Source of the DNA: Ascidiella aspersa
Lineage: Eukaryota
DNA: 64,000 nt
Direction of reading: 5' to 3'
Assembly (NCBI GenBank): GCA_963924565.1
Contig: OZ004613.1
Span: 10,602,001 to 10,666,000 of the forward strand
The translations under genes and the position numbers were made by a program. The notes under the pieces are model-generated. The model was not told the origin of the DNA, made no database searches, and worked only from the letters and a program-made list of their open reading frames with translations. This document shows, piece after piece, positions 6,586-64,000 of the stretch. Within the stretch, counting starts at the first letter, position 1; each line of letters begins with the position of its first letter.

Positions 6586-7278
6586 CGCATTGACCTATAT
6601 CCATCGGGCGTGCGCGCAAAGCTCGGCAACAGGGGACGTGTCGTTATTTTGCAGAATGTAAACACATTTCAAACTGCCTTCAAAAATGTGCGCACATTTT
6701 AAAATGCCTTCAAAATTGGCGTACATGTTTAAATTAGAGTAAGTTTTTTTAGAGTTAGTAACTCTTAACCTAAAAATGTGCGCAAATTTTGAAGGCATTT
6801 TAATAGTGCGCAACTTGGAAAAAAAGCGCGCAGATTTTGGAAGGCTGTTTAAAATGGGCGAACATTGTGAAAAAAGTGCGCACATTTTTGAAGGCAGTTC
6901 AAAATGTGCGCACATATTTTAAGGCAGTTCATAATGTGCGCACATTGTTAAAAAAAGTACGCACATTTTGGAAGACAGTTTAAAATGTGCGCACATTGTT
7001 AAAAAAGTGAGCACATTTTTAAAGACATTTTAAAATGTGCACACATTTTTTGCATATTTTGGCGTGCACATTTTTTCGCACATTGTGCAAAATATGTTCG
7101 CATCCCCGCCTCGATCTCGGTGGAGCCTGAGATGTACAGGTTGTCCAAGGAGGAACGAACCGGGCCAGGCCCGTAAGGGAGCAGCCAAAAAATTCCCACG
7201 TCAATCAGTAGCGGGATAGCGCCTGTGAATAGGCAAGGTGTCGTAGCCCATTCAATACAGCAGGACCCAATTCTTTTT
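6586..7278 (+). pseudogene. Disrupted 7SL RNA relic (copy 0): 5' Alu domain missing, S domain split by an insertion
   Basis: 6586-6631 (CGCATTGACCTATATCCATCGGGCGTGCGCGCAAAGCTCGGC..) is a diverged match to the middle of the array 7SL. Homology resumes at 7113 (GATCTCGGTGGAGCCTGAG) and runs to the T5 terminator. Confidence 0.88.
6632..7107. mobile_element. Non-autonomous TIR element (MITE) with internal AATGTGCGCACATT subrepeats, inserted in 7SL copy 0
   Basis: Imperfect 28-bp TIRs: GGGGACGTGTCGTTATTTTGCAGAATGT vs reverse complement of the right end GGGGATGCGAACATATTTTGCACAATGT. The interior is many degenerate copies of palindromic AAAATGTGCGCACATTTT(GAAGGCA). No clean target-site duplication seen. 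Confidence 0.7.
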
Positions 7279-8230
7279 CAACTAATGTTTTACTGCATCA
7301 CTTCGAAATGTTTACACATTGATTATTTTTTTATGTCTTTAAGTCCGTCAGCCGTGTTGGTTTTAGTTAGTGCATTGAGTGTAAATTCCTTTTATTTTTC
7401 AAACAAAACAGAACAAAAACATTGATATTTTATCCACAATGATACCACTTTTTAGTTAGTTCATTATATACCGAATACATTCTGTTGTATTTGTTCAAGA
7501 TAAAATTAGAATGATATTTCGTTATTCTTCTATCTCACTGCAAACAGCTTGGTATCCATGACTGGATATCTTATCAAAAGGATCAATTGCCTTTGGTTAC
7601 TCACTTTAGATCAAGGAGGAATTCGTGTGAATTGCTTTGGTTCACTTTGCGTTGCAACTACTCACTAAAGATAAAACAATAATCAATCTGGCGAAGATTG
7701 AGTGTGTTGTTACGATGAGGCAGAAATAATTTCAAACGAGCATTATGTAAATCACGAGATATAACAGAGATGGTTCACGACAAAGATTTTTCCTCACACC
7801 TAACCATCGTCGATATATCAAAATGTAAGTTGGACAACGACAAACCACTTTTGGAAGACATTTTATAATGTATTATTTCTTAAGCTGTCGTTTTCAATTA
7901 AAATTGATAACTGTTTTAGAGACTGGTGAAAGTATATAATATACATTATGTGTTGCACCAAATTTTGGTGAGATTTTAATATTCGCAAATGCACCGATCC
8001 ACTCGGAATTTTGTATGCAGTTTTTCTCTTACCTGAAAAAAATATTTTTTCCTTGTCCGAAAGCTTCTTCCGATTAGTAGAACACGTGTGTGTTACAATT
8101 CACTAGATAATGAAGTGTCTAACAACTAATTACACCAATCAATTGTTTTAATTCGTGTTTACCATTAGTTGTTGATTTGTACAGCCAGTTCCGTAGCTTG
8201 AAAGTATACGTTGATCAGTCGGCTCATCTA

Positions 8231-8246
8231 ATGACGTCATTTAATA
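8231..8246 (+). promoter_or_regulatory. Upstream CRE/ATF palindrome + TATA-like element of 7SL gene (present in every unit, about -68 to -53)
   Basis: ATGACGTCAT TTAATA. An upstream ATF/CRE site is an established feature of human 7SL promoters. Copies 5, 6, 14 and 26 carry TAACGTCA instead. Confidence 0.7.
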
Positions 8247-8298
8247 GGGCTGCGCGTCTGCGGCCACATTGATAGGCCCAATTTCGACTCGCTTTTTC

Positions 8299-8600
8299 GC
8301 CGGGCTCGTGGGTGTGGGCCTCTAATCCGAACGACTTCGGAGGCTAGAGTTGGAGGACGGCTTGAGAATGGGAGTTCTGCGGCGCATTGACCTATGTCGA
8401 TCGGGCGTCCGCGCTAAGCTCGGCGTCAATATGGAGATCTCGGGGGAGTCTGAGATGTCCAGGTTGTCCGAGGAGGAACGAACCGGGTCAGGCCCGTATG
8501 GGAGCAGCCAAAAGTTCCCACGTCGTTCAGTAGCGGGATAGCGCCTGTGAATAGGCAAGGTGTCGTAGCCCATTCAATACAGCAGGACCCAATTCTTTTT
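8299..8600 (+). ncRNA. RN7SL: 7SL/SRP RNA copy 1 (divergent, possibly defective)
   Basis: Full-length, colinear with metazoan 7SL, but the Alu UGU motif is UCU, the helix-8 loop is GUAU, and there are other private changes. Confidence 0.8.
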
Positions 8601-9629
8601 CAACGAATGTTTTACTGCATCACTTCAAAATGTTTATGCACATTGATAATATTTTTATGTCTTCAAGTCCGTCAGCCGTGTTGGTTTCAATTAGTAGGCT
8701 ACATTGAGTGTAAATTCCTTTTATTTTTCCAACAAATCAAAACAAAAACATTGACATTTTATCCACAATGATACCCCTTTTAGTTAGTTCATTATAAACT
8801 GAATAAATTCTGTTTTTTTTGTTAAAGATAAAACTAGAGTGATATTTCGTTATTCTTCTATCTTACTACAAACAGCTTGGTATCCAAGACTGGCTATCTT
8901 ATCAAAAGGATCAATTGCCTTTGGTTACATACTTTAGATTAAGTAGGAATTCGTGTGATTAGCTTTGGTTCACTTTGCAATGAAACTACTCTCAAAAGAT
9001 AAAACAATAATCAATCTGGCGAAGATTGAGTGTGTTATTACGATAAAGAAGAAATAATTTCAAACGAGCATTATGTAAATCACGAGATACAACAGAGATG
9101 GTTCACGACAAAGTTTTTTTCCTCACACGTAACCATCGTCGATATATCAAAATGTAAGTTGGACAACGACAAACTACTTTTGGAAGACATTTTATAATGT
9201 ATTATTTCTTAAGCTGTCGTTTTCAATTAAAATTGATAACTCTTTTAGAGACTGGTGAAAGTATATAATATACATTATGTGTTGTACCAAATTTTGGTGT
9301 GATTTTATTATTCGTAAATGCACCGATCCACTCGGAAATATGTATGCAGTTTTTCTATTACCTGAAAAAATTATTTTTTCCTTGCCCGAGTGCTTAACTT
9401 CTGATTAGTAGAACACGTGTGTGTTGCAATTCACGAGATAATGAAGTGTCTAATAACTAATTACACCAATCAATTGTTTTAATTCGTTTTTACCATTAGT
9501 TGTTGATTTGTACAGCCAGTTCGGTAGCTTGAAAGTATACGTTGATCAGTCGGCTCATCTAATGACGTCATTTAATAGGGCTGCGCGTCTGCGGCCACAT
9601 TGATAGGCCCAATTTCGACTCGCTTTTTC

Positions 9630-9886
9630 GCCGGGCTTGTTGGTGTGGGCCTGTAATCCGAACGACTTCGGAGGCTAGAGTTGGAGGACGGCTTGAGAAT
9701 GGGAGTTCTGCGGCGCATTGACCTATGTCGATCTGGCGTCCGCGCTAAGCTCGGCGTCAATATGGAGATCTCGGGGGAGCCTGAGATGTCCAGGTTGTCC
9801 AAGGAGGAACGAACCGGGCCAGGCCCGTAAGGGAGCAGCCAAAAGTTCCCACGTCGTTCAGTAGCGGGATAGCGCCTGTGAATAGG
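9630..9886 (+). pseudogene. 7SL copy 2, 3'-deleted (43 nt including most of the terminator)
   Basis: GAATAGG joins directly to TTCAACGAATG. The 3' strand of helix 5 and the T5 run are lost. Confidence 0.85.
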
Positions 9887-10898
9887 TTCAACGAATGTTT
9901 AACTGCATCACTTCGAAATGTTTACACATTGATAATTGTTTTATGTCTTTAAGTCCGTCAGTCGTGTTGGTTTCATTTAGTGCATTGAGTGTAAATTCCT
10001 TTTCTTTTTCAAACAAAACAAAACAAAAATATTGATATTTTATCCACAATGATACCACTTTTTAGTTAGTTCATTATATACCGAATACATTCTGTTGTTT
10101 TTGTTGAAGATAAAATTTGAATGATATTTCGTTATTCTTCCATCTTACTGCAAACAGCTGGGTATCCAAGACTGGCTATCTTATCAAAAGGATCAATTGC
10201 CTTTGGTTACACACTTTAGATTAAGTAGGAATTCGTGTGAATAGCTTTGGTTCACTTTGCGTTGCAACTACTCTCAAAAGATAAAACAATAATCAATCTG
10301 GCGAAGATTGAGTGTGTTATTACGATAAAGAAGAAATAATTTCAAACGACATTATGTAAATCACGAGATACAACAGAGATGGTTCACGACAAATTTTTTC
10401 CTCACACGTAACCATCGTCGATGTAAGTTGGACAACGACAAGCTACTTTTGGAAGACATTTTATAATGTATTATTTCTTAAGCTGTCGTTTTCAATTGAA
10501 ATTGATAACTGCTTTAGAGACTGGTGAAAGTATATAACATACATTATGTGTTGTACCAAATTTTGGTGTGATTTTAATATTCGTAAATGCACCGATCCAC
10601 TCGGAATTTTGTATGCAGTTTTTCTATTACCTGAAAAAGTTATTTTTTTCTTGCCAGAGTGCTTAACTTCTGATTAGTAGAACACGTGTGTGTTGCAATT
10701 CACTAGATAATGAAGTGTCTAACAACTAATTACACCAATCAATTGTTTTAATTCGTGTTTACCATTAGTTGTTGATTTGTACAGCCAGTTCCGTAGCTTG
10801 AAAGTATATGTTGATCAATCGGCTCATCTAATGACGTCATTTAATAGGGCTGCGCGTCTGCGGCCACATTGATAGGCCCAATTTCGACTCGCTTTTTC

Positions 10899-11200
10899 GC
10901 CGGGCTCGTTGGTGTGGGCCTGTAATCCGAACGACTTCGGAGGCTAGAGTTGGAGGACGGCTTGAGAATGGGAGTTCTGCGGCGCATTGACCTATGTCGA
11001 TCGGGCGTCCGCGCTAAGCTCGGCGTCAATATGGAGATCTCGGGGGAGCCTGAGATGTCCAGGTTGTCCAAGGAGGAACGAACCGGGCCAGGCCCGTAAG
11101 GGAGCAGCCAAAAGTTCCCACGTCGTTCAGTAGCGGGATAGCGCCTGTGAATAGGCAAGGTGTCGTAGCCCATTCAATACAGCAGGACCCAATTCTTTTT
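10899..11200 (+). ncRNA. RN7SL: 7SL/SRP RNA copy 3 (GGAG loop)
   Basis: GCCGGGC 5' end, Alu helices 3/4 with UGU, helix 6 ATCTCGGG-GGAG-CCTGAGAT, helix 8 GGC-CAGG-CCC-GTAA-GGG-AGCA-GCC (SRP54 site), GAATGGG/CCCATTC pairing, T5 terminator. Confidence 0.95.
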
Positions 11201-12221
11201 CAACGAATGTTTAACTGCATCACTTCGAAATGTTTACACATTGATAATTTTTTTATGTCTTTAAGTCCGTCAGCCGTGTTGGTTTCATTTAGAGCATTGA
11301 GTGTAAATTACTTTTATTTTTCAAACAAAACAAAACAAAAATATTGATATTTTATCCACAATGATACCACTTTTTAGTTAGTTTATTATATCCCGAATAC
11401 ATTCTGTTGTTTTTGTTGAAGATAAAATTTGAATGATATTTCGTTATTCTTCCATCTTACTGCAAACAGCTGGGTATCCAAGACTGGCTATCTTATCAAA
11501 AGGATCAATTGCCTTTGGTTACACACTTTAGATTAAGTAGGAATTCGTGTTAATTGCTTTGGTTCACTTTGCGTTGCAACTACTCACTAAAGATAAAACA
11601 ATAATCAATCTGGCAAAGATTGGGTGTGTTGTTACGATAAGGCAGAAATAATTTCAAACGAGCATTATGTAAATCACGAGATACAACAGAGATGGTTCAC
11701 GACAAAGTTTTTTCCTCACACGTAACCATCGTCGATATATCAAAATGTAATTTGGACAACGACAAACCACTTTTGGAAGACATTTTATAAAGTATTATTT
11801 CTTAAGCTGTCGTTTTCAGATAAAATTGATAACTCTTTTAGAGACTGGTGAAAGTATATAATATACATTATGTGATCTACCAAATTTTGGTGAGATTTTA
11901 ATATTCGTAAATGCACTGATACACTCGGAATTTTGTATGCAGTTTTTCTATTACCTGAAAAAATATTTTTTCCTTGCCCGAGTGCTTAACTTCCGATTAG
12001 TAGAATACGTGTGTGTAAGAATTCACTAGATAATGAAGTGTTTAACAACTAATTACACCAATCAATTGTTTTAATTCGCGTTTACCATTAGTTGTTGATT
12101 TGTACAGCCAGTTCCATAGCTTGAATGTATACTTAGATCAGTCGGCTCATCTAATGACGTCATTTAATAGGGCTGCGCGTCTGCGGCCACATTGATAGGC
12201 CCAATTTCGACTCGCTTTTTC

Positions 12222-12523
12222 GCCGGGCTCGTTGGTGTGGGCCTGTAATCCGAACGACTTCGGAGGCTAGAGTTGGAGGACGGCTTGAGAATGGGAGTTC
12301 TGCGGCGCATTGACCTATGTCGATCGGGCGTCCGCGCTAAGCTCGGCGTCAATATGGAGATCTTGGGGAAGCCTGAGATGTCCAGGTTGTCCAAGGAGGA
12401 ACGAACCGGGCCAGGCCCGTAAGGGAGCAGCCAAAAGTTCCCACGTCGTTCAGTAGCGGGATAGCGCCTGTGAATAGGCAAGGTGTCGTAGCCCATTCAA
12501 TACAGCACGACCCAATTCTTTTT
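12222..12523 (+). ncRNA. RN7SL: 7SL/SRP RNA copy 4 (GAAG loop)
   Basis: Same hallmarks as copy 3. Confidence 0.93.
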
Positions 12524-13544
12524 CAACGAATGTTTTACTGCATCAATCACTTGTAAATGTATACACATTGATAATTTTTTTATGTATTTAAGTCCGTCAG
12601 TCGTGTTGGTTTCATTTAGAGCATTGAGTGTGAATTACTTTTATATTTCAAACAAAACAAAAATATTGATATTTTATCCACAATGATACCACTTTTTAGT
12701 TAGTTTATTATATCCCGAATACATTCTGTTGTTTTTGTTGAAGATAAAATTTGAATGATATTTCGTTATCCTTCCATCTTACTGCAAACAGCTGGGTATC
12801 CAAGACTGGCTATCTTATCAAAAGGATCAATTGCATTTGGTTACACACTTTAAATTAAGTAGGAATTCGTGTGAATTGCTTTGGTTCACTTTGCGTTGCA
12901 ACTACTCACTAAAGATAAAACAATAATCAATCTGGCGAAGATTGGGTGTGTTGTTACGATAAGGCAGAAATAATTTCAAACGAGCATTATGTAAATCACG
13001 AGATACAACAGAGATGGTTCACGACAAAGTTTTTCCTCACACGTAACCATCGTCGATATATCAAAATGTAAGTTGGACAACGACAAACCACTTTTGGAAG
13101 ACATTTTATAATGTATCATTTCTTAAGCTGTCGTTTTCAATTAAAATTGATAACTGTTTTAGAGACTGGTGAAAGTATATAATATACATTATGTATTGCA
13201 CCAAATTTTGGTGTGATTTTAATATTCGTAAATGCACCGATACACTCGGAATTTTGTATGCAGTTTTTCTATTACCTGAAAAAAATTATTTTTTCCTTGC
13301 CCGAGTGCTTAACTTCTGATTAGTAGAACACGTGTGTGTTGCAATTCACTAGATAATGAAGTGTCTAACAACTAATTACACCAATCAATTGTTTTAATTC
13401 GTTTTTACCATTAGTTGTTGATTTGTAAAGCCAGTTCCATAGCTTGAATGTATACTTAGATCAGTCGGCTCATCTAATAACGTCATTTAATAGGGCTGCG
13501 CGTCTGCGGCCACATTGATAGGCCCAATTTCGACTCGCTTTTTC

Positions 13545-13848
13545 GCCGGGCTCGTTGGTGTGGGCCTGTAATCCAAACGACTTCGGAGGCTAGAGTTGGA
13601 GGACGGCTTGAGAATGGGAGTTCTGCGGCGCATTGACCTATGTCGATCGGGCGTCCGCGCTAAGCTCGGCGTCAATATGGAGATCTCGGGGGAGCCTGAG
13701 ATGTCCAGGTTGTCCAAGGAGGAACGAACCGGGCCAGGCCCGTAAGGGAGCAGCCAAAAGTTCCCACGTCGTTCAGTAGCGGGATAGCGCCTGTGAATAG
13801 GCAAGGTGTCGTAGCCCATTCAATATACAGCAGGACCCAATTCTTTTT
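13545..13848 (+). ncRNA. RN7SL: 7SL/SRP RNA copy 5 (GGAG, 2-nt insertion near 3' end)
   Basis: Same hallmarks as copy 3. Confidence 0.9.
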
Positions 13849-14875
13849 CAACGAATGTTTTACTGCATCAATCACTTGTAAATGTTTACACATTGATAAT
13901 TTTTTTATGTCTTTAAGTCCGTCAGCCGTGTTGGTTTCATTTAGAGCATTGAGTGTAAATTACTTTTATTTTTCAAACAAAACAAAACAAAAATATTGAT
14001 ATTTTATCCACAATGATACCACTTTTTAGTTAGTTCATTATATACCGAATACATTCTGTTGTTTTTGTTGAAGATAAAATTAGAATGATATTTCGTTATT
14101 CTTCCATCTTACTGCAAACAGCTGGGTATCCAAGACTGGCTATCTTATCAAAAGGATCAATTGCCTTTGGTTACACACTTTAAATTAAGTAGGAATTCGT
14201 GTGAATTGCTTTGGTTCACTTTGCGTTGCAACTACTCACTAAAGATAAAACAATAATCAATCTGGCGAAGATTGGGTGTGTTGTTACGATAAGGCAGAAA
14301 TAATTTCAAACGAGCATTATGTAAATCACGAGATACAAAAGAGATGGTTCACGACAAAGTTTTTTCCTCACACGTAACCATCGTCGATATATCAAATTGT
14401 AAGTTGGACAACGACAAACCACTTTTGGAAGACATTTTATAATGTATTATTTCTTAAGCTGTCGTTTTCAATTAAAATTGATAATTGTTTCAGAGACTGG
14501 TGAAAGTATATAATATACATTATGTATTGCACCAAATTTTGGTGTGATTTTAATATTCGTAAATGCACCGATACACTCGGAATTTTGTATGCAGTTTTTC
14601 TATTACCTGAAAAAAATTATTTTTTCCTTGCCCGAGTGCTTAACTTCTGATTAGTAGAACACGTGTGTGTTGCAATTCACTAGATAATGAAGTGTCTAAC
14701 AACTAATTACACCAATCAATTGTTTTAATTCGTTTTTACCATTAGTTGTTGATTTGTAAAGCCAGTTCCATAGCTTGAATGTATACTTAGATCAGTCGGC
14801 TCATCTAATAACGTCATTTAATAGGGCTGCGCGTCTGCGGCCACATTGATAGGCCCAATTTCGACTCGCTTTTTC

Positions 14876-15177
14876 GCCGGGCTCGTTGGTGTGGGCCTGT
14901 AATCCAAACGACTTCGGAGGCTAGAGTTGGAGGACGGCTTGAGAATGGGAGTTCTGCGGCGCATTGACCTATGTCGATCGGGCGTCCGCGCTAAGCTCGG
15001 CGTCAATATGGAGATCTCGGGGGAGCCTGAGATGTCCAGGTTGTCCAAGGAGGAACGAACCGGGCCAGGCCCGTAAGGGAGCAGCCAAAAGTTCCCACGT
15101 CGTTCAGTAGCGGGATAGCGCCTGTGAATAGGCAAGGTGTCGTAGCCCATTCAATACAGCAGGACCCAATTCTTTTT
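14876..15177 (+). ncRNA. RN7SL: 7SL/SRP RNA copy 6 (GGAG)
   Basis: Same hallmarks as copy 3. Confidence 0.93.
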
Positions 15178-16202
15178 CAACGAATGTTTTACTGCATCAA
15201 TCACTTGTAAATGTTTACACATTGATAATTTTTTTATGTCTTTAAGTCCGTCAGCCGTGTTGGTTTCATTTAGAGCATTGAGTGTAAATTACTTTTATTT
15301 TTCAAACAAAACAAAACAAAAATATTGATATTTTATCCACAATGATACCACTTTTTAGTTAGTTCATTATATACCGAATACATTCTGTTGTTTTTGTTGA
15401 AGATAAAATTAGAATGATATTTCGTTATTCTTCCATCTTACTGCAAACAGCTGGGTATCCAAGACTGGCTATCTTATCAAAAGGATCAATTGCCTTTGGT
15501 TACACACTTTAGATTAAGTAGGAATTCGTGTGAATTGCTTTGGTTCACTTTGCGTTGCAACTACTCACTAAAGATAAAACAATAATCAATCTGGCGAAGA
15601 TTGGGTGTGTTGTTACGATAAGGCAGAAATAATTTCAAACGAGCATTATGTAAATCACGAGATACAAAAGAGATGGTTCACGACAAAGTTTTTTCCTCAC
15701 ACGTAACCATCGTCGATATATCAAAATGTAAGTTGGACAACGACAAACCACTTTTGGAAGACATTTTATAAAGTATTATTTCTTAAGCTGTCGTTTTCAG
15801 ATAAAATTGATAACTCTTTTAGAGACTGGTGAAAGTATATAATATACATTATGTGATCTACCAAATTTTGGTGTGATTTTAATATTCGTAAATGCACTGA
15901 TCCACTCGGAATTTTGTATGCAGTTTTTCTATTACCTGAAAAAATATTTTTTCCTTGCCCGAGTGCTTAACTTCCGATTAGTAGAATACGTGTGTGTAAG
16001 AATTCACTAGATAATGAAGTGTTTAACAACTAATTACACCAATCAATTGTTTTAATTCGTGTTTACCATTAGTTGTTGATTTGTACAGCCAGTTCCATAG
16101 CTTGAATGTATACTTAGATCAGTCGGCTCATCTAATGACGTCATTTAATAGGGCTGCGCGTCTGCGGCCACATTGATAGGCCCAATTTCGACTCGCTTTT
16201 TC

Positions 16203-53594: not shown

Positions 53595-54619
53595 CAACGA
53601 ATGTTTTACTGCATCAATCACTTGTAAATGTTTACACATTGATAATTTTTTTATGTCTTTAAGTCCGTCAGCCGTGTTGGTTTCATTTAGAGCATTGAGT
53701 GTAAATTACTTTTATTTTTCAAACAAAACAAAACAAAAATATTGATATTTTATCCACAATGATACCACTTTTTAGTTAGTTCATTATATACCGAATACAT
53801 TCTGTTGTTTTTGTTGAAGATAAAATTAGAATGATATTTCGTTATTCTTCCATCTTACTGCAAACAGCTGGGTATCCAAGACTGGCTATCTTATCAAAAG
53901 GATCAATTGCATTTGGTTACACACTTTAGATTAAGTAGGAATTCGTGTGAATTGCTTTGGTTCACTTTGCGTTGCAACTACTCACTAAAGATAAAACAAT
54001 AATCAATCTGGCGAAGATTGGGTGTGTTGTTACGATAAGGCAGAAATAATTTCAAACGAGCATTATGTAAATCACGAGATACAACAGAGATGGTTCACGA
54101 CAAAGTTTTTTCCTCACACGTAACCATCGTCGATATATCAAATTGTAAGTTGGACAACGACAAACCACTTTTGGAAGACATTTTATAATGTATTATTTCT
54201 TAAGCTGTCGTTTTCAATTAAAATTGATAACTGTTTCAGAGACTGGTGAAAGTATATAATATACATTATGTATTGCACCAAATTTTGGTGTGATTTTAAT
54301 ATTCGTAAATGCACCGATACACTCGGAATTTTGTATGCAGTTTTTCTATTACCTGAAAAAATATTTTTTCCTTGCCCGAGTGCTTAACTTCCGATTAGTA
54401 GAATACGTGTGTGTAAGAATTCACTAGATAATGAAGTGTTTAACAACTAATTACACCAATCAATTGTTTTAATTCGTTTTTACCATTTGTTGTTGATTTG
54501 TAAAGCCAGTTCCATAGCTTGAATGTATTCTTAGATCAGTCGGCTCATCTAATGACGTCATTTAATAGGGCTGCGCGTCTGCGGCTACATTGATAGGCCC
54601 AATTTCGACTCGCTTTTTC

Positions 54620-54921
54620 GCCGGGCTCGTTGGTGTGGGCCTGTAATCCAAACGACTTCGGAGGCTAGAGTTGGAGGACGGCTTGAGAATGGGAGTTCTG
54701 CGGCGCATTGACCTATGTCGATCGGGCGTCCGCGCTAAGCTCGGCGTCAATATGGAGATCTCGGGGGAGCCTGAGATGTCCAGGTTGTCCAAGGAGGAAC
54801 GAACCGGGCCAGGCCCGTAAGGGAGCAGCCAAAAGTTCCCACGTCGTTCAGTAGCGGGATAGCGCCTGTGAATAGGCAAGGTGTCGTAGCCCATTCAATA
54901 CAGCAGGACCCAATTCTTTTT
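54620..54921 (+). ncRNA. RN7SL: 7SL/SRP RNA copy 36 (GGAG)
   Basis: Same hallmarks as copy 3. Confidence 0.93.
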
Positions 54922-55946
54922 CAACAAATGTTTTACTGCATCAATCACTTGTAAATGTTTACACATTGATAATTTTTTTATGTATTTAAGTCCGTCAGCC
55001 GTGTTGGTTTCATTTAGAGCATTGAGTGTAAATTACTTTTATTTTTCAAACAAAACAAAACAAAAATATTGATATTTTATCCACAATGATACCACTTTTT
55101 AGTTAGTTCATTATATACCGAATACATTCTGTTGTTTTTGTTGAAGATAAAATTAGAATGATATTTCGTTATTCTTCCATCTTTCTGCAAACAGCTGGGT
55201 ATCCAAGACTGGCTATCTTATCAAAAGGATCAATTGCCTTTGGTTACACACTTTAGATTAAGTAGGAATTCGTGTGAATTGCTTTGGTTCACTTTGCGTT
55301 GCAACTACTCACTAAAGATAAAACAATAATCAATCTGGCGAAGATTGGGTGTGTTGTTACGATAAGGCAGAAATAATTTCAAACGAGCATTATGTAAATC
55401 ACGAGATACAAAAGAGATGGTTCACGACAAAGTTTTTTCCTCACACGTAACCATCGTCGATATATCAAAATGTAAGTTGGACAACGACAAACCACTTTTG
55501 GAAGACATTTTATAAAGTATTATTTCTTAAGCTGTCGTTTTCAGATAAAATTGATAACTCTTTTAGAGACTGGTGAAAGTATATAATATACATTATGTGA
55601 TCTACCAAATTTTGGTGTGATTTTAATATTCGTAAATGCACTGATCCACTCGGAATTTTGTATGCAGTTTTTCTATTACCTGAAAAAATATTTTTTCCTT
55701 GCCCGAGTGCTTAACTTCCGATTAGTAGAATACGTGTGTGTAAGAATTCACTAGATAATGAAGTGTTTAACAACTAATTACACCAATCAATTGTTTTAAT
55801 TCGTGTTTACCATTAGTTGTTGATTTGTACAGCCAGTTCCATAGCTTGAATGTATACTTAGATCAGTCGGCTCATCTAATGACGTCATTTAATAGGGCTG
55901 CGCGTCTGCGGCCACATTGATAGGCCCAATTTCGACTCGCTTTTTC

Positions 55947-56248
55947 GCCGGGCTCGTTGGTGAGGGCCTGTAATCCGAACGACTTCGGAGGCTAGAGTTG
56001 GAGGACGGCTTGAGAATGGGAGTTCTGCGGCGCATTGACCTATGTCGATCGGGCGTCCGCGCTAAGCTCGGCGTCAATATGGAGATCTTTGGGAAGCCTG
56101 AGATGTCCAGGTTGTCCAAGGAGGAACGAACCGGGCCAGGCCCGTAAGGGAGCAGCCAAAAGTTCCCACGTCGTTCAGTAGCGGGATAGCGCCTGTGAAT
56201 AGGCAAGGTGTCGTAGCCCATTCAATACAGCAGGACCCAATTCTTTTT
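55947..56248 (+). ncRNA. RN7SL: 7SL/SRP RNA copy 37 (GAAG)
   Basis: Same hallmarks as copy 3. Confidence 0.93.
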
Positions 56249-57275
56249 CAACGAATGTTTTACTGCATCAATCACTTGTAAATGTATACACATTGATAAT
56301 TTTTTTATGTATTTAAGTCCGTCAGCCGTGTTGGTTTCATTTAGAGCATTGAGTGTAAATTACTTTTATTTTTCAAACAAAACAAAACAAAAATATTGAT
56401 ATTTTATCCACAATGATACCACTTTTTAGTTAGTTCATTATATCCCGAATACATTCTGTTGTTTTTGTTGAAGGTAAAATTTGAATGATATTTCGTTATT
56501 CTTCCATCTTACTGCAAACAGCTGGGTATCCAAGACTGGCTATCTTATCAAAAGGATCAATTGCATTTGGTTACACACTTTAGATTAAGTAGGAATTCGT
56601 GTGAATTGCTTTGGTTCACTTTGCGTTGCAACTACTCACTAAAGATAAAACAATAATCAATCTGGCGAAGATTGGGTGTGTTGTTACGATAAGGCAGAAA
56701 TAATTTCAAACGAGCATTATGTAAATCACGAGATACAACAGAGATGGTTCACGACAAAGTTTTTTCCTCACACGTAACCATCGTCGATATATCAAATTGT
56801 AAGTTGGACAACGACAAACCACTTTTGGAAGACATTTTATAATGTATTATTTCTTAAGCTGTCGTTTTCAATTAAAATTGATAATTGTTTCAGAGACTGG
56901 TGAAAGTATATAATATACATTATGTATTGCACCAAATTTTGGTGTGATTTTAATATTCGTAAATGCACCGATACACTCGGAATTTTGTATGCAGTTTTTC
57001 TATTACCTGAAAAAAATTATTTTTTCCTTGCCCGAGTGCTTAACTTCTGATTAGTAGAATACGTGTGTGTTGCAATTCACTAGATAATGAAGTGTCTAAC
57101 GACTAATTACACCAATCAATTGTTTTAATTCGTTTTTACCATTTGTTGTTGATTTGTAAAGCCAGTTCCATAGCTTGAATGTATTCTTAGATCAGTCGGC
57201 TCATCTAATGACGTCATTTAATAGGGCTGCGCGTCTGCGGCTACATTGATAGGCCCAATTTCGACTCGCTTTTTC

Positions 57276-57577
57276 GCCGGGCTCGTTGGTGTGGGCCTGT
57301 AATCCAAACGACTTCGGAGGCTAGAGTTGGAGGACGGCTTGAGAATGGGAGTTCTGCGGCGCATTGACCTATGTCGATCGGGCGTCCGCGCTAAGCTCGG
57401 CGTCAATATGGAGATCTCGGGGGAGCCTGAGATGTCCAGGTTGTCCAAGGAGGAACGAACCGGGCCAGGCCCGTAAGGGAGCAGCCAAAAGTTCCCACGT
57501 CGTTCAGTAGCGGGATAGCGCCTGTGAATAGGCAAGGTGTCGTAGCCCATTCAATACAGCAGGACCCAATTCTTTTT
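57276..57577 (+). ncRNA. RN7SL: 7SL/SRP RNA copy 38 (GGAG)
   Basis: Same hallmarks as copy 3. Confidence 0.93.
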
Positions 57578-58602
57578 CAACAAATGTTTTACTGCATCAA
57601 TCACTTGTAAATGTTTACACATTGATAATTTTTTTATGTCTTTAAGTCCGTCAGCCGTGTTGGTTTCATTTAGAGCATTGAGTGTAAATTACTTTTATTT
57701 TTCAAACAAAACAAAACAAAAATATTGATATTTTATCCACAATGATACCACTTTTTAGTTAGTTTATTATATCCCGAATACATTCTGTTGTTTTTGTTGA
57801 AGATAAAATTTGAATGATATTTCGTTATTCTTCCATCTTACTGCAAACAGCTGGGTATCCAAGACTGGCTATCTTATCAAAAGGATCAATTGCCTTTGGT
57901 TACACACTTTAGATTAAGTAGGAATTCGTGTGAATTGCTTTGGTTCACTTTGCGTTGCAACTACTCACTAAAGATAAAACAATAATCAATCTGGCGAAGA
58001 TTGGGTGTGTTGTTACGATAAGGCAGAAATAATTTCAAACGAGCATTATGTAAATCACGAGATACAACAGAGATGGTTCACGACAAAGTTTTTTCCTCAC
58101 ACGTAACCATCGTCGATATATCAAAATGTAAGTTGGACAACGACAAACAACTTTTGGAAGACATTTTATAAAGTATTATTTCTTAAGCTGTCGTTTTCAG
58201 ATAAAATTGATAACTCTTTTAGAGACTGGTGAAAGTATATAATATACATTATGTGATCTACCAAATTTTGTTGTGATTTTAATATTCGTAAATGCACTGA
58301 TCCACTCGGAATTTTGTATGCAGTTTTTCTATTACCTGAAAAAATATTTTTTCCTTGCCCGAGTGCTTAACTTCCGATTAGTAGAATACGTGTGTGTAAG
58401 AATTCACTAGATAATGAAGTTTTTAACAACTAATTACACCAATCAATTGTTTTAATTCGTGTTTGCCATTAGTTGTTGATTTGTACAGCCAGTTCCATAG
58501 CTTGAATGTATACTTAGATCAGTCGGCTCATCTAATGACGTCATTTAATAGGGCTGCGCGTCTGCGGCCACATTGATAGGCCCAATTTCGACTCGCTTTT
58601 TC

Positions 58603-58904
58603 GCCGGGCTCGTTGGTGTGGGCCTGTAATCCGAACGACTTCGGAGGCTAGAGTTGGAGGACGGCTTGAGAATGGGAGTTCTGCGGCGCATTGACCTATG
58701 TCGATCGGGCGTCCGCGCTAAGCTCGGCGTCAATATGGAGATCTTGGGGAAGCCTGAGATGTCCAGGTTGTCCAAGGAGGAACGAACCGGGCCAGGCCCG
58801 TAAGGGAGCAGCCAAAAGTTCCCACGTCGTTCAGTAGCGGGATAGCGCCTGTGAATAGGCAAGGTGTCGTAGCCCATTCAATACAGCAGGACCCAATTCT
58901 TTTT
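58603..58904 (+). ncRNA. RN7SL: 7SL/SRP RNA copy 39 (GAAG)
   Basis: Same hallmarks as copy 3. Confidence 0.93.
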
Positions 58905-59931
58905 CAACGAATGTTTTACTGCATCAATCACTTGTAAATGTATACACATTGATAATTTTTTTATGTATTTAAGTCCGTCAGCCGTGTTGGTTTCATTTAG
59001 AGCATTGAGTGTAAATTACTTTTATTTTTCAAACAAAACAAAACAAAAATATTGATATTTTATCCACAATGATACCACTTTTTAGTTAGTCCATTATATC
59101 CCGAATACATTCTGTTGTTTTTGTTGAAGGTAAAATTTGAATGATATTTCGTTATTCTTCCATCTTACTGCAAACAGCTGGGTATCCAAGACTGGCTATC
59201 TTATCAAAAGGATCAATTGCCTTTGGTTACACACTTTAGATTAAGTAGGAATTCGTGTGAATTGCTTTGGTTCACTTTGCGTTGCAACTACTCACTAAAG
59301 ATAAAACAATAATCAATCTGGCGAAGATTGGGTGTGTTGTTACGATAAGGCAGAAATAATTTCAAACGAGCATTATGTAAATCACGAGATACAACAGAGA
59401 TGGTTCACGACAAAGTTTTTTCCTCACACGTAACCATCGTCGATATATCAAAATGTAAGTTGGACAACGACAAACCACTTTTGGAAGACATTTTATAATG
59501 TATTATTTCTTAAGCTGTCGTTTTCAATTAAAATTGATAATTGTTTTAGAGACTGGTGAAAGTGTATAATATACATTATGTATTGCACCAAATTTTGGTG
59601 TGATTTTAATATTCGTAAATGCACCGATACACTCAGAATTTTGTATGCAGTTTTTCTATTACCTGAAAAAATTTATTTTTTCCTTGCCCGAGTGCTTAAC
59701 TTCTGATTAGTAGAACACGTGTGTGTTGCAATTCACTAGATTATGAAGTGTCTAACAACTAATTACACCAATCAATTGTTTTAATTCGTTTTTGGCATTA
59801 GTTGTTGATTTGTACAGCCAGTTCCGTAGCTTGAAAGTATACTTAGATCAGTCGGCTCATCTAATGACGTCATTTAATAGGGCTGCGCGTCTGCGGCCAC
59901 ATTGATAGGCCCAATTTCGACTCGCTTTTTC

Positions 59932-60232
59932 GCCGGGCTCGTTGGTGTGGGCCTGTAATCCGAACGACTTCGGAAGCTAGAGTTGGAGGACGGCTTGAGA
60001 GTGGGAGTTCTGCGGCGCATTGACCTATGTCGATCGGGCGTCCGCGCTAAGCTCGGCGTCAATATGGAGATCTCGGGGGGCCTGAGATGTCCAGGTTGTC
60101 CAAGGAGGAACGAACCGGCCCAGGCCCATAAGGGAGCAGCCAAAAGTTTCCACGTCGTTCAGTAGCGGGATAGCGCCTGTGAATAGGCAAGGTGTCGTAG
60201 CCCATTCAATACAGCAGGACCCAATTCTTTTT
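59932..60232 (+). ncRNA. RN7SL: 7SL/SRP RNA copy 40 (probably defective)
   Basis: Full length, but the helix-6 loop A is deleted (CGGGGGGCC), the helix-8 loop is AUAA (not GNRA), and there is a helix-8 stem mismatch. Confidence 0.8.
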
Positions 60233-61238
60233 CAACGAATGTTTTACTGCATCAATCACTTGTAAATGTTTTCACATTGATAATTTTTTTATGTCTTTAA
60301 GTCCGTCAGCCGTGTTGGTTTCATTTAGACCATTGAGTGTAAATTACTTTTATTTTTCAAACAAAACAAAACAAAAATATTGATATTTTATCCACAATGA
60401 TACCACTTTTTAGTTAGTTTATTATATCCCGAATACATTCTGTTGTTTTTGTTGAAGATAAAATTTGAATGCTATTTCGTTATTCTTCCATCTTACTGCA
60501 AACAGCTGGGTATCCAAGACTGGCTATCTTATCAAGAGGATCAATTGCCTTTGGTTACGCACTTTAGATTAAGTAGGAATTCGTGTGAATTGCTTTGGTT
60601 CACTTTGCGTTGCAACTACTCATTAAAGATAAAACAATAATCAATCTGGCGAAGATTGGGTGTGTTGTTACGATAAGGCAGAAATAATTTCAAACGAGCA
60701 TTATGTAAATCACGAGATACAACAGAGATGGTTCACGACAAAGTTTTTTCCTCACACGTAACCATCGTCGATATATCAAAATGTAAGTTGGACAACGACA
60801 AACCACTTTTGGAAGACATTTTATAATGTATTATTTCTTAAGCTGTCGTTTTCAATTAAAATTGATAACTCTTTCAGAGACTGGTGAAAGTATATAATAT
60901 ACATTATGTGTTCTACCAAATTTTGGTGTGATTTTAATATTCGTAAATGCACCGATCCACTCGGAATTTTGTATGCAGATTTTCTATTACCTGAAAAAAA
61001 TATTATTTCCTTGCCCAAGTGCTTAACTTCCGATTAGTAGAATACGTGTGTGTAAGAATTCACTAGATAATCAAGTGTTTAACAACTAATTACACCAATC
61101 AATTGTTTTAATTCGTGTTTACCATTAGTTGTTGATCTTGAAAGTATACTTAGATCAATCGGGTCATCTAATGACGTCATTTAATAGTGCTGCGCGTCTG
61201 CGGCCACATTGATAGGCCCAATTTCGACTCGCTTTTTC

Positions 61239-61540
61239 GCCGGGCTCGTTGGTGTGGGCCTGTAATCCGAACGACTTCGGAAGCTAGAGTTGGAGGACGG
61301 CTTGAGAATGGGAGTTCTGCGGCGCATTGACCTATGTCGATCGGGCGTCCGCGCTAAGCTCGGCGTCAATATGGAGATCTTGGGGAAGCCTGAGATGTCC
61401 AGGTTGTCCAAGGAGGAACGAACGGGGCCAGGCCCGTAAGGGAGCAGCCAAAAGTTCCCACGTCGTTCAGTAGCGGGATAGCGCCTGTGAATAGGCAAGG
61501 TGTCGTAGCCCATTCAATACAGCAGGACCCAATTCTTTTT
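61239..61540 (+). ncRNA. RN7SL: 7SL/SRP RNA copy 41 (GAAG)
   Basis: Same hallmarks as copy 3. Confidence 0.92.
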
Positions 61541-62546
61541 CAACGAATGTTTTACTGCATCAATCACTTGTAAATGTATACACATTGATAATTTTTTTAT
61601 GTATTTAAGTCCGTCAGTCGTGTTGGTTTCATTTAGAGCATTGAGTGTAAATTACTTTTATATTTCAAACAAAACAAAACAAAAATATTGATATTTTATC
61701 CACAATGATACCACTTTTTAGTTAGTTTATTATATCCCGAATACATTCTGTTGTTTTTGTTGAAGATAAAATTTGAATGATATTTCGTTATCCTTCCATC
61801 TTACTGCAAACGGCTGGGTATCCAAGACTGGCTATCTTATCAAAAGGATCAATTGCATTTGGTTACACACTTTAGATTAAGTAGGAATTCGTGTGAATTG
61901 CTTTGGTTCACTTTGCGTTGCAACTACTCACTAAAGATAAAACAATAATCAATCTGGCGAAGATTGGGTGTGTTGTTACGATAAGGCAGAAATAATTTCA
62001 AACGAGCATTATGTAAATCACGAGATACAACAGAGATGGTTCACGACAAAGTTTTTTCCTCACACGTAACCATCGTCGATATATCAAAATGTAAGTTGGA
62101 CAACGACAAACCACTTTTGGAAGACATTTTATAATGTATTATTTCTTAAGCTGTCGTTTTCAATTAAAATTGATAACTCTTTCAGAGACTGGTGAAAGTA
62201 TATAGTATACATTATGTGTTCTACCAAATTTTGGTGTGATTTTAATATTCGTAAATGCACCGATCCACTCGGAATTTTGTATGCAGATTTTCTATTACCT
62301 GAAAAAAATATTTTTTCCTTGCCCAAGTGCTTAACTTCCGATTAGTAGAATACGTGTGTGTAAGAATTCACTAGATAATGAAGTGTTTAACAACTAATTA
62401 CACCAATCAATTGTTTTAATTCGTGTTTACCATTAGTTGTTGATCTTGAAAGTATACTTAGATCAATCGGGTCATCTAATGACGTCATTTAATAGGGCTG
62501 CGCGTCTGCGGCCACATTGATAGGCCCAATTTCGACTCGCTTTTTC

Positions 62547-62848
62547 GCCGGGCTCGTTGGTGTGGGCCTGTAATCCGAACGACTTCGGAGGCTAGAGTTG
62601 GAGGACGGCTTGAGAATGGGAGTTCTGCGGCGCATTGACCTATGTCGATCGGGCGTCCGCGCTAAGCTCGGCGTCAATATGGAGATCTTGGGGAAGCCTG
62701 AGATGTCCAGGTTGTCCAAGGAGGAACGAACCGGGCCAGGCCCGTAAGGGAGCAGCCAAAAGTTCCCACGTCGTTCAGTAGCGGGATAGCGCCTGCGAAT
62801 AGGCAAGGTGTCGTAGCCCATTCAATACAGCAGGACCCAATTCTTTTT
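62547..62848 (+). ncRNA. RN7SL: 7SL/SRP RNA copy 42 (GAAG)
   Basis: Same hallmarks as copy 3. Confidence 0.92.
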
Positions 62849-63875
62849 CAACGAATGTTTTACTGCATCAATCACTTGTAAATGTATACACATTGATAAT
62901 TTTTTTATGTATTTAAGTCCGTCAGCCGTGTTGGTTTCATTTAGAGCATTGAGTGTAAATTACTTTTATTTTTCAAACAAAACAAAACAAAAATATTGAT
63001 ATTTTATCCACAATGATACCACTTTTTATTTAGTTCATTATATCCCGAATACATTCTGTTGTTTTTGTTGAAGGTAAAATTTGAATGATATTTCGTTATT
63101 CTTCCATCTTACTGCAAACAGCTGGGTATCCAAGACTGGCTATCTTATCAAAAGGATCAATTGCCTTTGGTTACACACTTTAGATTAAGTAGGAATTCGT
63201 GTGAATTGCTTTGGTTCACTTTGCGTTGCAACTACTCACTAAAGATAAAACAATAATCAATCTGGCGAAGATTGGGTGTGTTGTTACGATAAGGCAGAAA
63301 TAATTTCAAACGAGCATTATGTAAATCACGAGATACAACAGAGATGGTTCACGACAAAGTTTTTTCCTCACACGTAACCATCGTCGATATATCAAAATGT
63401 AAGTTGGACAACGACAAACCACTTTTGGAAGACATTTTATAATGTATTATTTCTTAAGCTGTCGTTTTCAATTAAAATTGATAATTGTTTTAGAGACTGG
63501 TGAAAGTATATAATATACATTATGTATTGCACCAAATTTTGGTGTGATTTTAATATTCGTAAATGCACCGATACACTCAGAATTTTGTATGCAGTTTTTC
63601 TATTACCTGAAAAAAATTATTTTTTCCTTGCCCGAGTGCTTAACTTCTGATTAGTAGAACACGTGTGTGTTGCAATTCACTAGATAATGAAGTGTCTAAC
63701 AACTAATTACACCAATCAATTGTTTTAATTCGTTTTTAGCATTAGTTGTTGATTTGTACAGCCAGTTCCGTAGCTTGAAAGTATACTTAGATCAGTCGGC
63801 TCATCTAATGACGTCATTTAATAGGGCTGCGCGTCTGCGGCCACATTGATAGGCCCAATTTCGACTCGCTTTTTC

Positions 63876-64000
63876 GCCGGGCTCGTTGGTGTGGGCCTGT
63901 AATCCGAACGACTTCGGAAGCTAGAGTTGGAGGACGGCTTGAGAGTGGGAGTTCTGCGGCGCATTGACCTATGTCGATCGGGCGTCCGCGCTAAGCTCGG
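63876..64000 (+). ncRNA. RN7SL: 7SL/SRP RNA copy 43 (partial, cut by window end)
   Basis: 5' 125 nt present; shares the CGGAAG and GAGTGGG variants with copy 40. Confidence 0.88.

What the first reader, a model, noticed from the sequence alone, without database searches (positions are those of the whole stretch)
6586..64000. rDNA/5S-style tandem array of >=43 signal recognition particle (7SL) RNA genes, >57 kb and still continuing
Seen: each ~1.33 kb unit has a full 7SL with its own upstream CRE/TATA-like element and T5 terminator, so these are amplified genes, not retroposed copies (no poly-A tails or target-site duplications). Differences from human 7SL preserve the pairing (GAAUGGG/CCCAUUC, CUGCGGCGC/GUGUCGUAG, GGAAC/GUUCC, CCC-GUAA-GGG, Alu loop-loop GUUG/CGAC). 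Established: human and Drosophila have only about 2-3 true 7SL genes. Inference: a dosage-amplified SRP RNA locus under concerted evolution, perhaps for oocyte stockpiling or heavy secretion. I cannot verify whether it has been described.
Basis: partly seen in the sequence, partly recalled or inferred. Interest (0 to 1): 0.8.

Follow-up and report, generated by a model that had tools for sequence, protein, structure and literature searches.

The report
Tandem 7SL RNA gene array, sea squirt
A sea-squirt chromosome carries about 57 head-to-tail copies of the gene for the signal recognition particle RNA, each with its own promoter, alongside one lone copy on another chromosome, an arrangement so far reported only in zebrafish, where the array feeds the egg.

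Summary
Rfam finds 42 full-length Metazoa_SRP genes in the window (187-263 bits, period about 1.33 kb), plus a broken first copy at 6586-7275 and a copy cut by the window end. The array runs 20 kb further and ends at window coordinate about 84263: 57 genes plus one broken copy, 77.7 kb.

A whole-genome census finds only two other loci. One is an intact solo gene on contig C3 (265.5 bits, 8 fixed substitutions). The other is a promoter-bearing 92-nt relic on C1.

Array and solo gene share a conserved upstream block (TGACGTCA at -67/-60, CATTGATA at -32/-25) and no other flank.

In one stranded RNA run, reads cover the gene and leave 15 of 17 downstream spacer bins empty. About half carry the solo-gene letters and half the array letters, including array subtypes. 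The array is therefore transcribed, but per copy far less than the solo gene in that sample.

Pair-breaking variants in array genes are half the neutral expectation (16 against 32.2), so selection still acts on them. Even so, 42 of 57 copies carry some flaw.

Zebrafish has the same layout (67 clustered maternal copies, one somatic gene), so this is a new member of a known kind. The scan had no earlier 7SL note. An oocyte role is untested.

The parts
6586..6627 (+). Left edge of the array: fragment of a 7SL gene (unit positions 85-126, 90% identical)
   Evidence: blastn of one unit against the window plus downstream DNA
6640..7100 (.). Insertion that splits the first copy. It consists of tandem, partly palindromic repeats built on AAAATGTGCGCACATTTT (periods 50, 81 and 131).
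   Evidence: Tandem Repeats Finder rows at 6773-7050; sequence read
7113..8298 (+). Rest of the broken first unit: the 3' part of the gene to 7275, then spacer and the promoter of the next gene. 94.9% identical to the reference unit.
   Evidence: sequence
8299..63875 (+). 42 complete head-to-tail units of about 1327 bases. Each holds a 300-nt 7SL gene, a spacer of about 950 bases and a promoter block of about 75 bases. Gene starts are listed.
   Evidence: 42 of 42 RF00017 matches, 186.5-262.9 bits; mean pairwise identity 97.2%, gene 98.5%, spacer 96.8%, and 22 distinct gene sequences among 42.
10832..10839 (+). CRE/ATF-type octamer TGACGTCA at -67/-60 of the gene at 10899 (a representative consensus unit)
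   Evidence: present in 53 of 57 copies and in the solo C3 gene
10867..10874 (+). TATA-like box CATTGATA at -32/-25 of the gene at 10899
   Evidence: present in 57 of 57 copies and in the solo gene
10899..11198 (+). 7SL (SRP RNA) gene identical to the array consensus (0 substitutions)
   Evidence: 262.8 bits
11196..11200 (+). T5 run, the Pol III terminator at the gene end
   Evidence: tail TCTTTTTCAA; at least 4 T in 56 of 57 copies
14876..15175 (+). 7SL gene used as the reference for laying reads. Stranded RNA reads cover it, 15 of the 17 spacer bins downstream of it have zero depth, and only 2 reads run into the last two bins.
   Evidence: tables 2 and 3
9630..9930 (+). Damaged copy: the gene is cut after position 257 (last 43 bases deleted, terminator lost)
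   Evidence: 186.5 bits; pairwise alignment
63876..64000 (+). Start of the 43rd gene, cut by the window end. Beyond the window it carries a 102-base internal duplication.
4876..6062 (+). Left neighbour: last exons of ribosomal protein L10/uL16 (4876-5076 and 5880-6062)
   Evidence: Pfam PF00252 at E 7.5e-12 for the first exon, no Pfam match for the second
682..2139 (-). V-ATPase subunit F exons (1975-2139 and 682-858)
   Evidence: Pfam PF01990 at E 3e-6 and 5.3e-13

Best explanation
This is a genuine tandem array of RNA polymerase III genes for the signal recognition particle RNA. It spans 77.7 kb and holds 57 genes plus one broken edge copy.

Each unit of about 1.33 kb is a self-contained transcription unit. 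It has a conserved upstream block (CRE-type TGACGTCA at -67/-60, a GC-rich block, a TATA-like CATTGATA at -32/-25), a 300-nt gene that folds as a canonical metazoan 7SL, and a T5 terminator.

The array arose by DNA duplication. Unequal crossing-over keeps it alike, leaving blocks of near-identical units, a terminal two-unit higher-order repeat and more divergent edge units.

It coexists with one intact solo 7SL gene on another chromosome. That gene differs at 8 fixed positions and shares only the promoter block.

Shown: both kinds are transcribed. In the one RNA run examined they give about equal amounts of RNA, so the solo gene is far more active per copy.

Shown: selection still removes structure-breaking changes from array copies, but weakly. 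Most copies carry a flaw.

Inferred: the array is a second, differently regulated 7SL gene set whose large copy number serves a stage of very high demand. Oogenesis is the most likely such stage, as in zebrafish.
For: Identity and extent:
- 42 of 42 RF00017 matches in the window.
- 15 more genes and the array end in the fetched downstream DNA.

Whole-genome census:
- A 22-base 3' motif with up to 2 mismatches hits 61 places in the array and 1 on C3. The reversed control gives 0.
- A 29-base 5' motif with up to 3 mismatches hits 57 places in the array, 1 on C3 and 1 on C1.

Promoter:
- The array consensus and the solo gene differ in 10 of 302 gene columns but in 16 of 75 columns at -75..-1 (Fisher p = 1.5e-6). 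They differ in 17 of 29 columns further upstream and 21 of 40 downstream, which is effectively unalignable.
- CRE and the TATA-like box are kept in both. Mammalian 7SL genes have CRE at -51/-44 and a TATA-like box at -31/-24 (PMC7279448, passages read).

Transcription:
- RNA run X24 laid 43 reads, all with the first mate on the minus strand.
- Depth is 1-33 in the bins over the gene. It is 0 in 15 of 17 spacer bins downstream and in 5 of 5 bins upstream.
- Letters fixed in the solo gene and absent from all array copies make up 16 of 33, 16 of 33, 15 of 29 and 14 of 22 reads at 15074, 15103, 15134 and 15153. The rest are array letters.
- Array-only variants also appear: 148A in 4 of 17 reads (23 of 57 gene copies), 219T in 5 of 33 (7 of 57) and 250C in 4 of 29 (1 of 57).
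- An independent oyster metatranscriptome (X16) holds an array-type contig with 0 differences (depth 21.7) and a solo-type contig with the 5 linked differences (depth 13.2).

Selection (56 units, spacer base-specific spectrum as the neutral model):
- Variant alleles in the gene: 41 observed against 63.2 expected (P = 0.002).
- Pair-breaking: 16 against 32.2 (P = 0.0013).
- Pair-keeping: 10 against 12.2.
- Unpaired sites: 12 against 11.5.
- Promoter: 8 against 15.1 (P = 0.036).

Other:
- Of the 8 fixed array-versus-solo differences, none is clearly disruptive. One pair is better in each direction.
- The unit-type string shows unequal-crossover blocks.
Against: - Only 15 of 57 copies are free of all the flaws scored: a pair-breaking change, an indel, loss of the CRE, or loss of the first G of the helix-8 tetraloop. 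Three copies have a 102-base internal duplication and one lacks 43 bases at the 3' end.
- One solo gene equals the whole array in RNA output in X24, so most array copies may be weakly active or silent there.
- The RNA evidence is thin. It rests on 43 reads from about 6% of one run of unknown tissue, from another individual than the assembly, plus contigs of one metatranscriptome. The reads tool drops human-like reads without notice, which may explain the low depth over the Alu domain.
- Raw counts of segregating sites differ little between gene and spacer (41 of 300 against 167 of 953, p = 0.13). The selection signal appears only after correcting for base composition.
- Copy number was not checked by read depth: X22 laid 0 reads.
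Confidence: 0.82

Rival explanations
1. A decaying 7SL-derived satellite. The solo C3 gene is the working SRP RNA gene. The array is a mostly silent by-product of unequal crossing-over, and a few leaky copies give the array-type reads.
For: - 42 of 57 copies are flawed.
- Per-copy output is about 1/57 of the solo gene in X24.
- The solo gene has the best Rfam score, 265.5 against at most 262.9 bits.
- 250C, present in 1 of 57 copies, is seen in 4 of 29 reads. This could mean that a few copies dominate.
Against: - Array-type RNA is about half of all 7SL reads and includes at least three array subtypes.
- Pair-breaking variants are half the neutral expectation.
- The array consensus differs from the solo gene in only 10 of 302 gene columns, while the shared promoter differs in 16 of 75 and the flanks cannot be aligned.
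- All 57 copies keep the TATA-like box and 53 keep the CRE.
Confidence: 0.13
2. Assembly artefact: a few real copies were over-expanded by the assembler.
For: - No read-depth check succeeded (X22, 0 reads).
- Some units are identical at lags of 2 to 21 units.
Against: - Units are distinct: 26 unit types among 56 at a threshold of 4 or fewer differences, and 22 distinct gene sequences among 42.
- Both array edges are anchored in unique flanks, and private insertions sit at each end.
- The assembly is chromosome-scale, with 75 contigs.
- The unit including its spacer is held by 8 runs with word shares of 0.27 or more, from 7 studies.
Confidence: 0.03
3. Retroposed 7SL pseudogenes or a 7SL-derived SINE family.
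For: None found.
Against: - Copies are full length, head to tail and share one spacer.
- Each has an upstream promoter block, and there is no A-tail.
- The genome holds only three 7SL loci.
Confidence: 0.01

Closest known systems
Zebrafish maternal-type SRP RNA gene clusters (bioRxiv 10.1101/869651; section 14 read in full)
   Same: Many complete 7SL copies are clustered on one chromosome (67 there, 57 here). A solitary gene with a few percent sequence difference sits on another chromosome, and there is a third locus that contributes little. Differences lie in both the Alu and S domains. Clustered and solo types are both transcribed.
   Different: Zebrafish copies lie in three clusters with at least 91% mutual identity and differ by about 7% from the somatic gene. 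Here there is one uninterrupted array at about 97% identity, about 3% from the solo gene. In zebrafish the egg-to-adult switch is shown with staged RNA. Here no stage or tissue is known. The host here is a tunicate, not a vertebrate.
Oocyte/maternal versus somatic 5S rRNA gene systems of Xenopus and zebrafish (PMC5340908; only the abstract in a search listing was seen)
   Same: A Pol III gene is present as a large tandem array of one type and as few copies of another type. Arrays are kept alike by unequal exchange.
   Different: A different RNA. 5S arrays run to thousands of copies and use an internal TFIIIA-dependent promoter. This array uses an upstream CRE/TATA-like block.
Mammalian 7SL genes RN7SL1/2/3 (PMC7279448; passages read)
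   Same: Same RNA family. The promoter has the same logic, an upstream CRE-type TGACGTCA plus a TATA-like box near -30, and the gene ends in a T-run terminator.
   Different: The CRE here lies at -67/-60 instead of -51/-44.
7SL-derived SINEs (Alu, B1)
   Same: Many copies of 7SL-related sequence in one genome.
   Different: SINEs are dispersed, centrally deleted, A-tailed retrocopies without the upstream promoter. None of this applies to the array. The C1 relic is centrally truncated, but it kept the promoter and is single.

Membership tests
Metazoan SRP RNA (Rfam RF00017) | Covariance-model score above the curated cut-off over the full model | tested here: met
   42 of 42 in-window copies score 186.5-262.9 bits against 70, over model positions 1-299. 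The solo gene scores 265.5 bits.
Metazoan SRP RNA (Rfam RF00017) | Alu domain with the UGUAAU motif, and an S domain with tetraloop-capped helices 6 and 8 | tested here: met
   The alignment shows CCUGUAAUCC. Helix 6 has loop GGAG or GAAG, and helix 8 has loop GUAA in 49 of 57 copies, AUAA in 7 and GUAU in 1.
Metazoan SRP RNA (Rfam RF00017) | Made as a stable RNA of gene length | tested here: met
   Stranded reads are confined to the gene, with both array and solo letters. Exact ends were not resolved.
Tandem Pol III gene array under concerted evolution (5S-rDNA-like) | Head-to-tail units, each with a gene, promoter and terminator | tested here: met
Tandem Pol III gene array under concerted evolution (5S-rDNA-like) | Units more alike within the array than to the paralogue elsewhere, with signs of unequal exchange | tested here: met
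   There are 8 fixed differences to the solo gene. Seven occur in 0 of 57 array copies and one occurs in 1 of 57. Recurring blocks and a terminal YQ dimer repeat are seen. Edge units are 94-95% identical against about 97% inside.
Maternal/somatic dual small-RNA gene system (zebrafish type) | A clustered multi-copy type plus a solitary type with fixed sequence differences | tested here: met
Maternal/somatic dual small-RNA gene system (zebrafish type) | Both types transcribed | tested here: met
   (X24 reads, X16 contigs)
Maternal/somatic dual small-RNA gene system (zebrafish type) | The clustered type predominates in egg and early embryo and is replaced by the solo type in adult tissue | not testable with these tools
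   The single read-laying run was used on one run of unknown tissue. No staged data could be consulted.
7SL-derived SINE or retropseudogene | Dispersed copies with an A-tail and target-site duplications, and no upstream promoter | tested here: not met

The most novel reading that the evidence does not exclude
The array is the oocyte (maternal) type and the C3 gene the somatic type of SRP RNA in a tunicate.

The same genome also has a two-type 5S layout: dispersed clusters scoring 116 bits and a region of about 0.5 Mb on C4 scoring 104-109 bits. It also has a 7SK cluster.

Together these would extend the 'dual translation system' of zebrafish beyond vertebrates. The system would then be either old in the tunicate-vertebrate lineage or repeatedly invented wherever large eggs must be stocked quickly.
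Probability: 0.35. Interest if true: 0.7.

Novelty: new member of a known kind. Interest (0 to 1): 0.5.

Why it matters
SRP RNA is usually treated as a gene of one to a few copies. The only large clustered set found in print here is zebrafish's, described in a preprint as part of a maternal-specific translation system.

An array of 57 promoter-bearing copies beside a solo gene in a tunicate gives a second, distant case with clean diagnostic positions. One staged RNA experiment can therefore ask whether maternal and somatic SRP RNAs exist outside vertebrates.

The locus is also a compact natural example of how selection acts on a redundant structured-RNA array. Structure-breaking changes are halved, but most copies are still flawed.

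Tried and rejected
Tools that gave nothing useful:
- Tandem Repeats Finder cannot see the 1.33-kb period because its longest period is 500. It reported only the small palindromic repeats in the insertion at 6773-7050.
- Read depth as a copy-number check failed. The raw DNA run X22 laid 0 reads, apparently because it is another organism, and the oligo-dT run X19 laid nothing.
- ARAGORN found no tRNA gene in the window.
- The longest open frame in a doubled unit is 110 codons. It was not pursued as coding.

Readings rejected:
- The retroposition/SINE reading, on anatomy.

Literature. I found no report of a 7SL array in tunicates or in any invertebrate. The only precedent found is the zebrafish preprint. 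The searches were:
- '7SL / tandem array / SRP RNA'
- '7SL RNA genes / tandemly repeated'
- 'ascidian / 7SL'
- 'SRP RNA / Ciona / copies'
- 'maternal-type / somatic-type / SRP RNA'
- '7SL / tandem repeats / multigene family / snRNA'
- 'SRP RNA genes / copies / cluster'

A draft Didemnum genome reported one SRP RNA copy (PMC5006418, passages), but a short-read draft would collapse an array. Passages on 7SL in PMC12054243 and PMC10062562 were irrelevant. Supplementary tables of the zebrafish preprint (ST3) were not seen. They may hold cluster coordinates and unit sizes that bear on the comparison.

Earlier scan notes: nothing near the window and nothing on 7SL.

The species was not identified. 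'Tunicate' rests on earlier scan notes and on my finding of a cellulose-synthase domain and a GH6 domain 3 kb apart on one strand of C5. That this pairing is the tunicate hallmark is recalled, not taken from a call. The marine, seawater and oyster labels of the runs are consistent with it.


Full report
WHAT IS THERE

The Rfam scan of the whole window found 42 matches, all to Metazoa_SRP (RF00017). All are on the + strand and cover the full model, scoring 186.5-262.9 bits against a cut-off of 70. Gene starts are 1269-1331 bases apart.

The 42 units are 97.2% identical on average (minimum 93.7%). The gene part is 98.5% identical and the spacer 96.8%, and there are 22 distinct gene sequences.

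At 6586-6627 lies a fragment matching unit positions 85-126. An insertion of about 485 bases follows, made of partly palindromic tandem repeats. The rest of that unit runs from 7113. A further gene starts at 63876 and is cut by the window end.

EXTENT AND GENOME CENSUS

The window is C7:10602001-10666000 of a 308.6-Mb, 75-contig assembly. I fetched 200 kb downstream.
- The array continues for 15 more genes and ends at window coordinate about 84263.
- The last spacer holds an insertion of about 890 bases with inverted ends.
- The total is 57 genes plus the broken edge copy, over 77.7 kb.
- Three of the genes beyond or at the window end carry a 102-base internal duplication.

A 22-base motif from the 3' part, with up to 2 mismatches, occurs 61 times in the array and once on C3. 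The reversed control gives 0. A 29-base motif from the 5' part, with up to 3 mismatches, occurs 57 times in the array, once on C3 and once on C1.

The genome therefore has three 7SL loci:
- The array.
- An intact solo gene at C3:22387914-22388213 on the minus strand (265.5 bits).
- A 92-nt relic on C1 (29.5 bits, below the cut-off). It keeps the upstream promoter block but lacks about 207 central positions.

ANATOMY OF A UNIT

Upstream of each gene lie TGACGTCA at -67/-60 and CATTGATA at -32/-25. The first is present in 53 of 57 copies and the second in 57 of 57. A run of at least 4 T ends 56 of 57 genes. The exception, at 9630, has lost its last 43 bases.

Mammalian 7SL genes use a CRE TGACGTCA at -51/-44 and a TATA-like box at -31/-24, both shown to matter for Pol III transcription (PMC7279448, passages read). 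The layout here is the same apart from a CRE 16 bases further out.

No tRNA gene and no other Rfam family above threshold lies in the unit.

ARRAY VERSUS SOLO GENE

The solo gene differs from the array consensus by 8 substitutions, at positions 33, 48, 171, 199, 228, 259, 278 and 295, and by two extra T in the terminator. Seven of the eight letters occur in 0 of 57 array copies, and one (171T) occurs in 1 of 57.

None of the eight is clearly harmful:
- Three lie in unpaired positions, one of them the free second position of the helix-8 tetraloop.
- Two keep a pair.
- One mismatch stays a mismatch.
- One pair is better in the array and one is better in the solo gene.

Divergence between the two loci:

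| Region | Columns differing | Note |
|---|---|---|
| Gene | 10 of 302 | |
| -75..-1 | 16 of 75 | Fisher p = 1.5e-6 against the gene |
| Further upstream | 17 of 29 | about chance |
| Downstream | 21 of 40 | about chance |

The two loci are thus old paralogues that kept the gene and a patchwork of promoter blocks. Had the array drifted freely, its gene would be expected to have diverged several-fold more than it has.

IS THE ARRAY USED?

I laid four runs on one unit (14650-15900).

The raw RNA run X24 has the same organism label as runs that hold 0.60-0.66 of the unit's words.
- It laid 43 reads from about 6% of the run, all with the first mate on the minus strand.
- Depth is 1-33 in the bins over the gene. 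It is 0 in the 5 bins upstream and in 15 of the 17 bins downstream. Two reads run off the far end.
- The solo-gene letters make up 8 of 22, 16 of 33, 16 of 33, 15 of 29 and 14 of 22 reads at the five diagnostic places covered. That is about half, and these counts share reads. The rest are array letters.
- Array-only variants are also seen (copy counts): 148A in 4 of 17 reads (23 of 57 copies), 219T in 5 of 33 (7 of 57) and 250C in 4 of 29 with only 2 start places (1 of 57).

Contigs of an oyster metatranscriptome (X16) include an array-type piece with no differences (depth 21.7). They also include a 147-base piece with exactly the five solo-gene letters (depth 13.2). Thousands of 43-base pieces with 3 differences come from other organisms' 7SL.

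X22 (DNA) and X19 laid nothing.

The array is therefore transcribed, from more than one subtype. One solo gene nevertheless matches 57 array genes in output in that sample.

Limits: few reads, unknown tissue, another individual than the assembly, and a tool that silently drops human-like reads.

SELECTION WITHIN THE ARRAY

Raw counts of segregating sites barely differ: 41 of 300 in the gene against 167 of 953 in the spacer, p = 0.13. The gene is GC-rich, however, and in the spacer G and C change about twice as often as A and T.

With the spacer's base-specific spectrum as the neutral model (56 units):

| Class | Observed | Expected | P |
|---|---|---|---|
| All variant alleles in the gene | 41 | 63.2 | 0.002 |
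| Pair-breaking | 16 | 32.2 | 0.0013 |
| Pair-keeping | 10 | 12.2 | not significant |
| Unpaired sites | 12 | 11.5 | not significant |
| Promoter block | 8 | 15.1 | 0.036 |

This is the pattern expected if structure-breaking changes are removed, but inefficiently. Only 15 of 57 copies are free of a pair-breaking change, an indel, CRE loss or loss of the tetraloop G.

Two main gene subtypes exist: C143/G148 in 33 copies and T143/A148 in 23. The change is a wobble-preserving one plus helix-6 loop GGAG to GAAG.

TURNOVER

When units are grouped at 4 or fewer differences, the array reads ABCDEFGHIJKCDFFGLMINGMIODFGMGMIJCDPFGMQRSQTUVWXYQYQYQYQZ. It shows recurring short blocks and a terminal two-unit higher-order repeat, as unequal crossing-over produces. 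Edge units are the most divergent, at 94-95%.

CONTEXT

- The left neighbours are V-ATPase subunit F and ribosomal protein L10.
- To the right lies a lipoxygenase-like gene, judged by eye from open frames.
- The genome is a tunicate's according to earlier scan notes. I found a cellulose-synthase domain and a GH6 domain 3 kb apart on one strand of C5. From memory, this pairing is the tunicate cellulose synthase layout.
- Earlier notes also reported a two-type 5S layout and a 7SK cluster. I confirmed the outlines. 5S genes of 116 bits lie in small clusters on C2, C3, C5, C6 and C9, and 5S genes of 104-109 bits lie across C4:23.39-23.92 Mb. There are 14 7SK matches on C7 at 20.57-21.80 Mb, 13 of them within 21.50-21.80 Mb.

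COMPARISON WITH WHAT IS KNOWN

A zebrafish preprint (bioRxiv 10.1101/869651, section 14 read) reports three SRP-RNA gene sets:
- 67 complete copies in three clusters on chromosome 11, which dominate in egg and early embryo.
- A single gene on chromosome 3, 93% identical to the chromosome-11 consensus, which takes over in adults.
- A nearly silent single copy on chromosome 20.

The layout here is the same in kind. The stage-specific use, which defines that system, could not be tested. The seven literature searches listed under Tried and rejected found no report for tunicates or any invertebrate.

VERDICT

The dosage purpose is not shown, and the solo gene changes the picture.

This is a new member of a known kind. 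It is of moderate interest mainly because it makes a maternal/somatic SRP RNA question testable in a non-vertebrate chordate.

Noticed in passing
L033 2738-2899 (G000:C1:728738-728899, + strand): A third 7SL locus. It keeps an array-like upstream promoter block (TGACGTCA..GCGCGTCTGC, with part of the TATA-like region deleted), followed by only about 70 bases of the Alu-domain 5' part, a short 3' piece and CTCTTT. About 207 central positions are missing. It scores 29.5 bits, below the Rfam cut-off. It is a single, promoter-bearing, centrally deleted 7SL derivative, formally like the first step towards an Alu-type element. Expression is unknown.
   Followed up: partly
L001 1501-1800 (-), with L031/L032 (G000:C3:22378001-22398000): The solo 7SL gene lies about 220 bases upstream of, and on the same strand as, an open frame that looks like the first exon of an ALG1-type mannosyltransferase. 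Asparagine-synthetase-like exons lie 4-8 kb away on the other strand. Both were judged by eye from open frames only.
   Followed up: no
window 6640-7100: The insertion that breaks the first array copy is a block of tandem, partly palindromic repeats built on AAAATGTGCGCACATTTT (periods 50, 81 and 131). Its origin is unknown.
   Followed up: no
L012 9296-10000 and L013 1-184 (window coordinates about 83296-84184): An insertion of about 890 bases with inverted ends (GGGTCGGCAACC ... GGTTGCCGACCCC) sits in the last spacer of the array and looks like a MITE. The array sequence resumes for 80 bases after it and then ends.
   Followed up: no
L013 about 3000-4900 (-), G000:C7:10689000-10691000: The right-hand neighbour of the array has open frames that look like lipoxygenase exons. 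This was judged by eye and not scanned.
   Followed up: no
G000:C4:23.39-23.92 Mb, versus C2, C3, C5, C6 and C9: 5S rRNA genes fall into two score classes. Small dispersed clusters score 116 bits, and a region of about 0.5 Mb on C4 scores 104-109 bits. The first look gave 15992 rough candidates. This fits the two-type 5S layout reported in earlier scan notes.
   Followed up: partly
G000:C7:20.57-21.80 Mb: There are 14 matches to 7SK (RF00100, 40-54 bits) on the same contig as the 7SL array, 13 of them within 21.50-21.80 Mb, plus single matches on C4 and C9. Amplification of Pol III small-RNA genes seems a theme of this genome.
   Followed up: partly
G000:C5:19610700-19614090 (+): A cellulose-synthase domain (27.5 bits) and a glycosyl-hydrolase-6 domain (28.1 bits) lie 3 kb apart on one strand. 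From memory this is the layout of tunicate cellulose synthase. I used it only as a check on the taxon.
   Followed up: partly
window 15826-15900: Two RNA reads of X24 lie in the spacer about 300 bases upstream of the next gene, on the same strand as the 7SL RNA. They could be read-through, an upstream start or noise.
   Followed up: no
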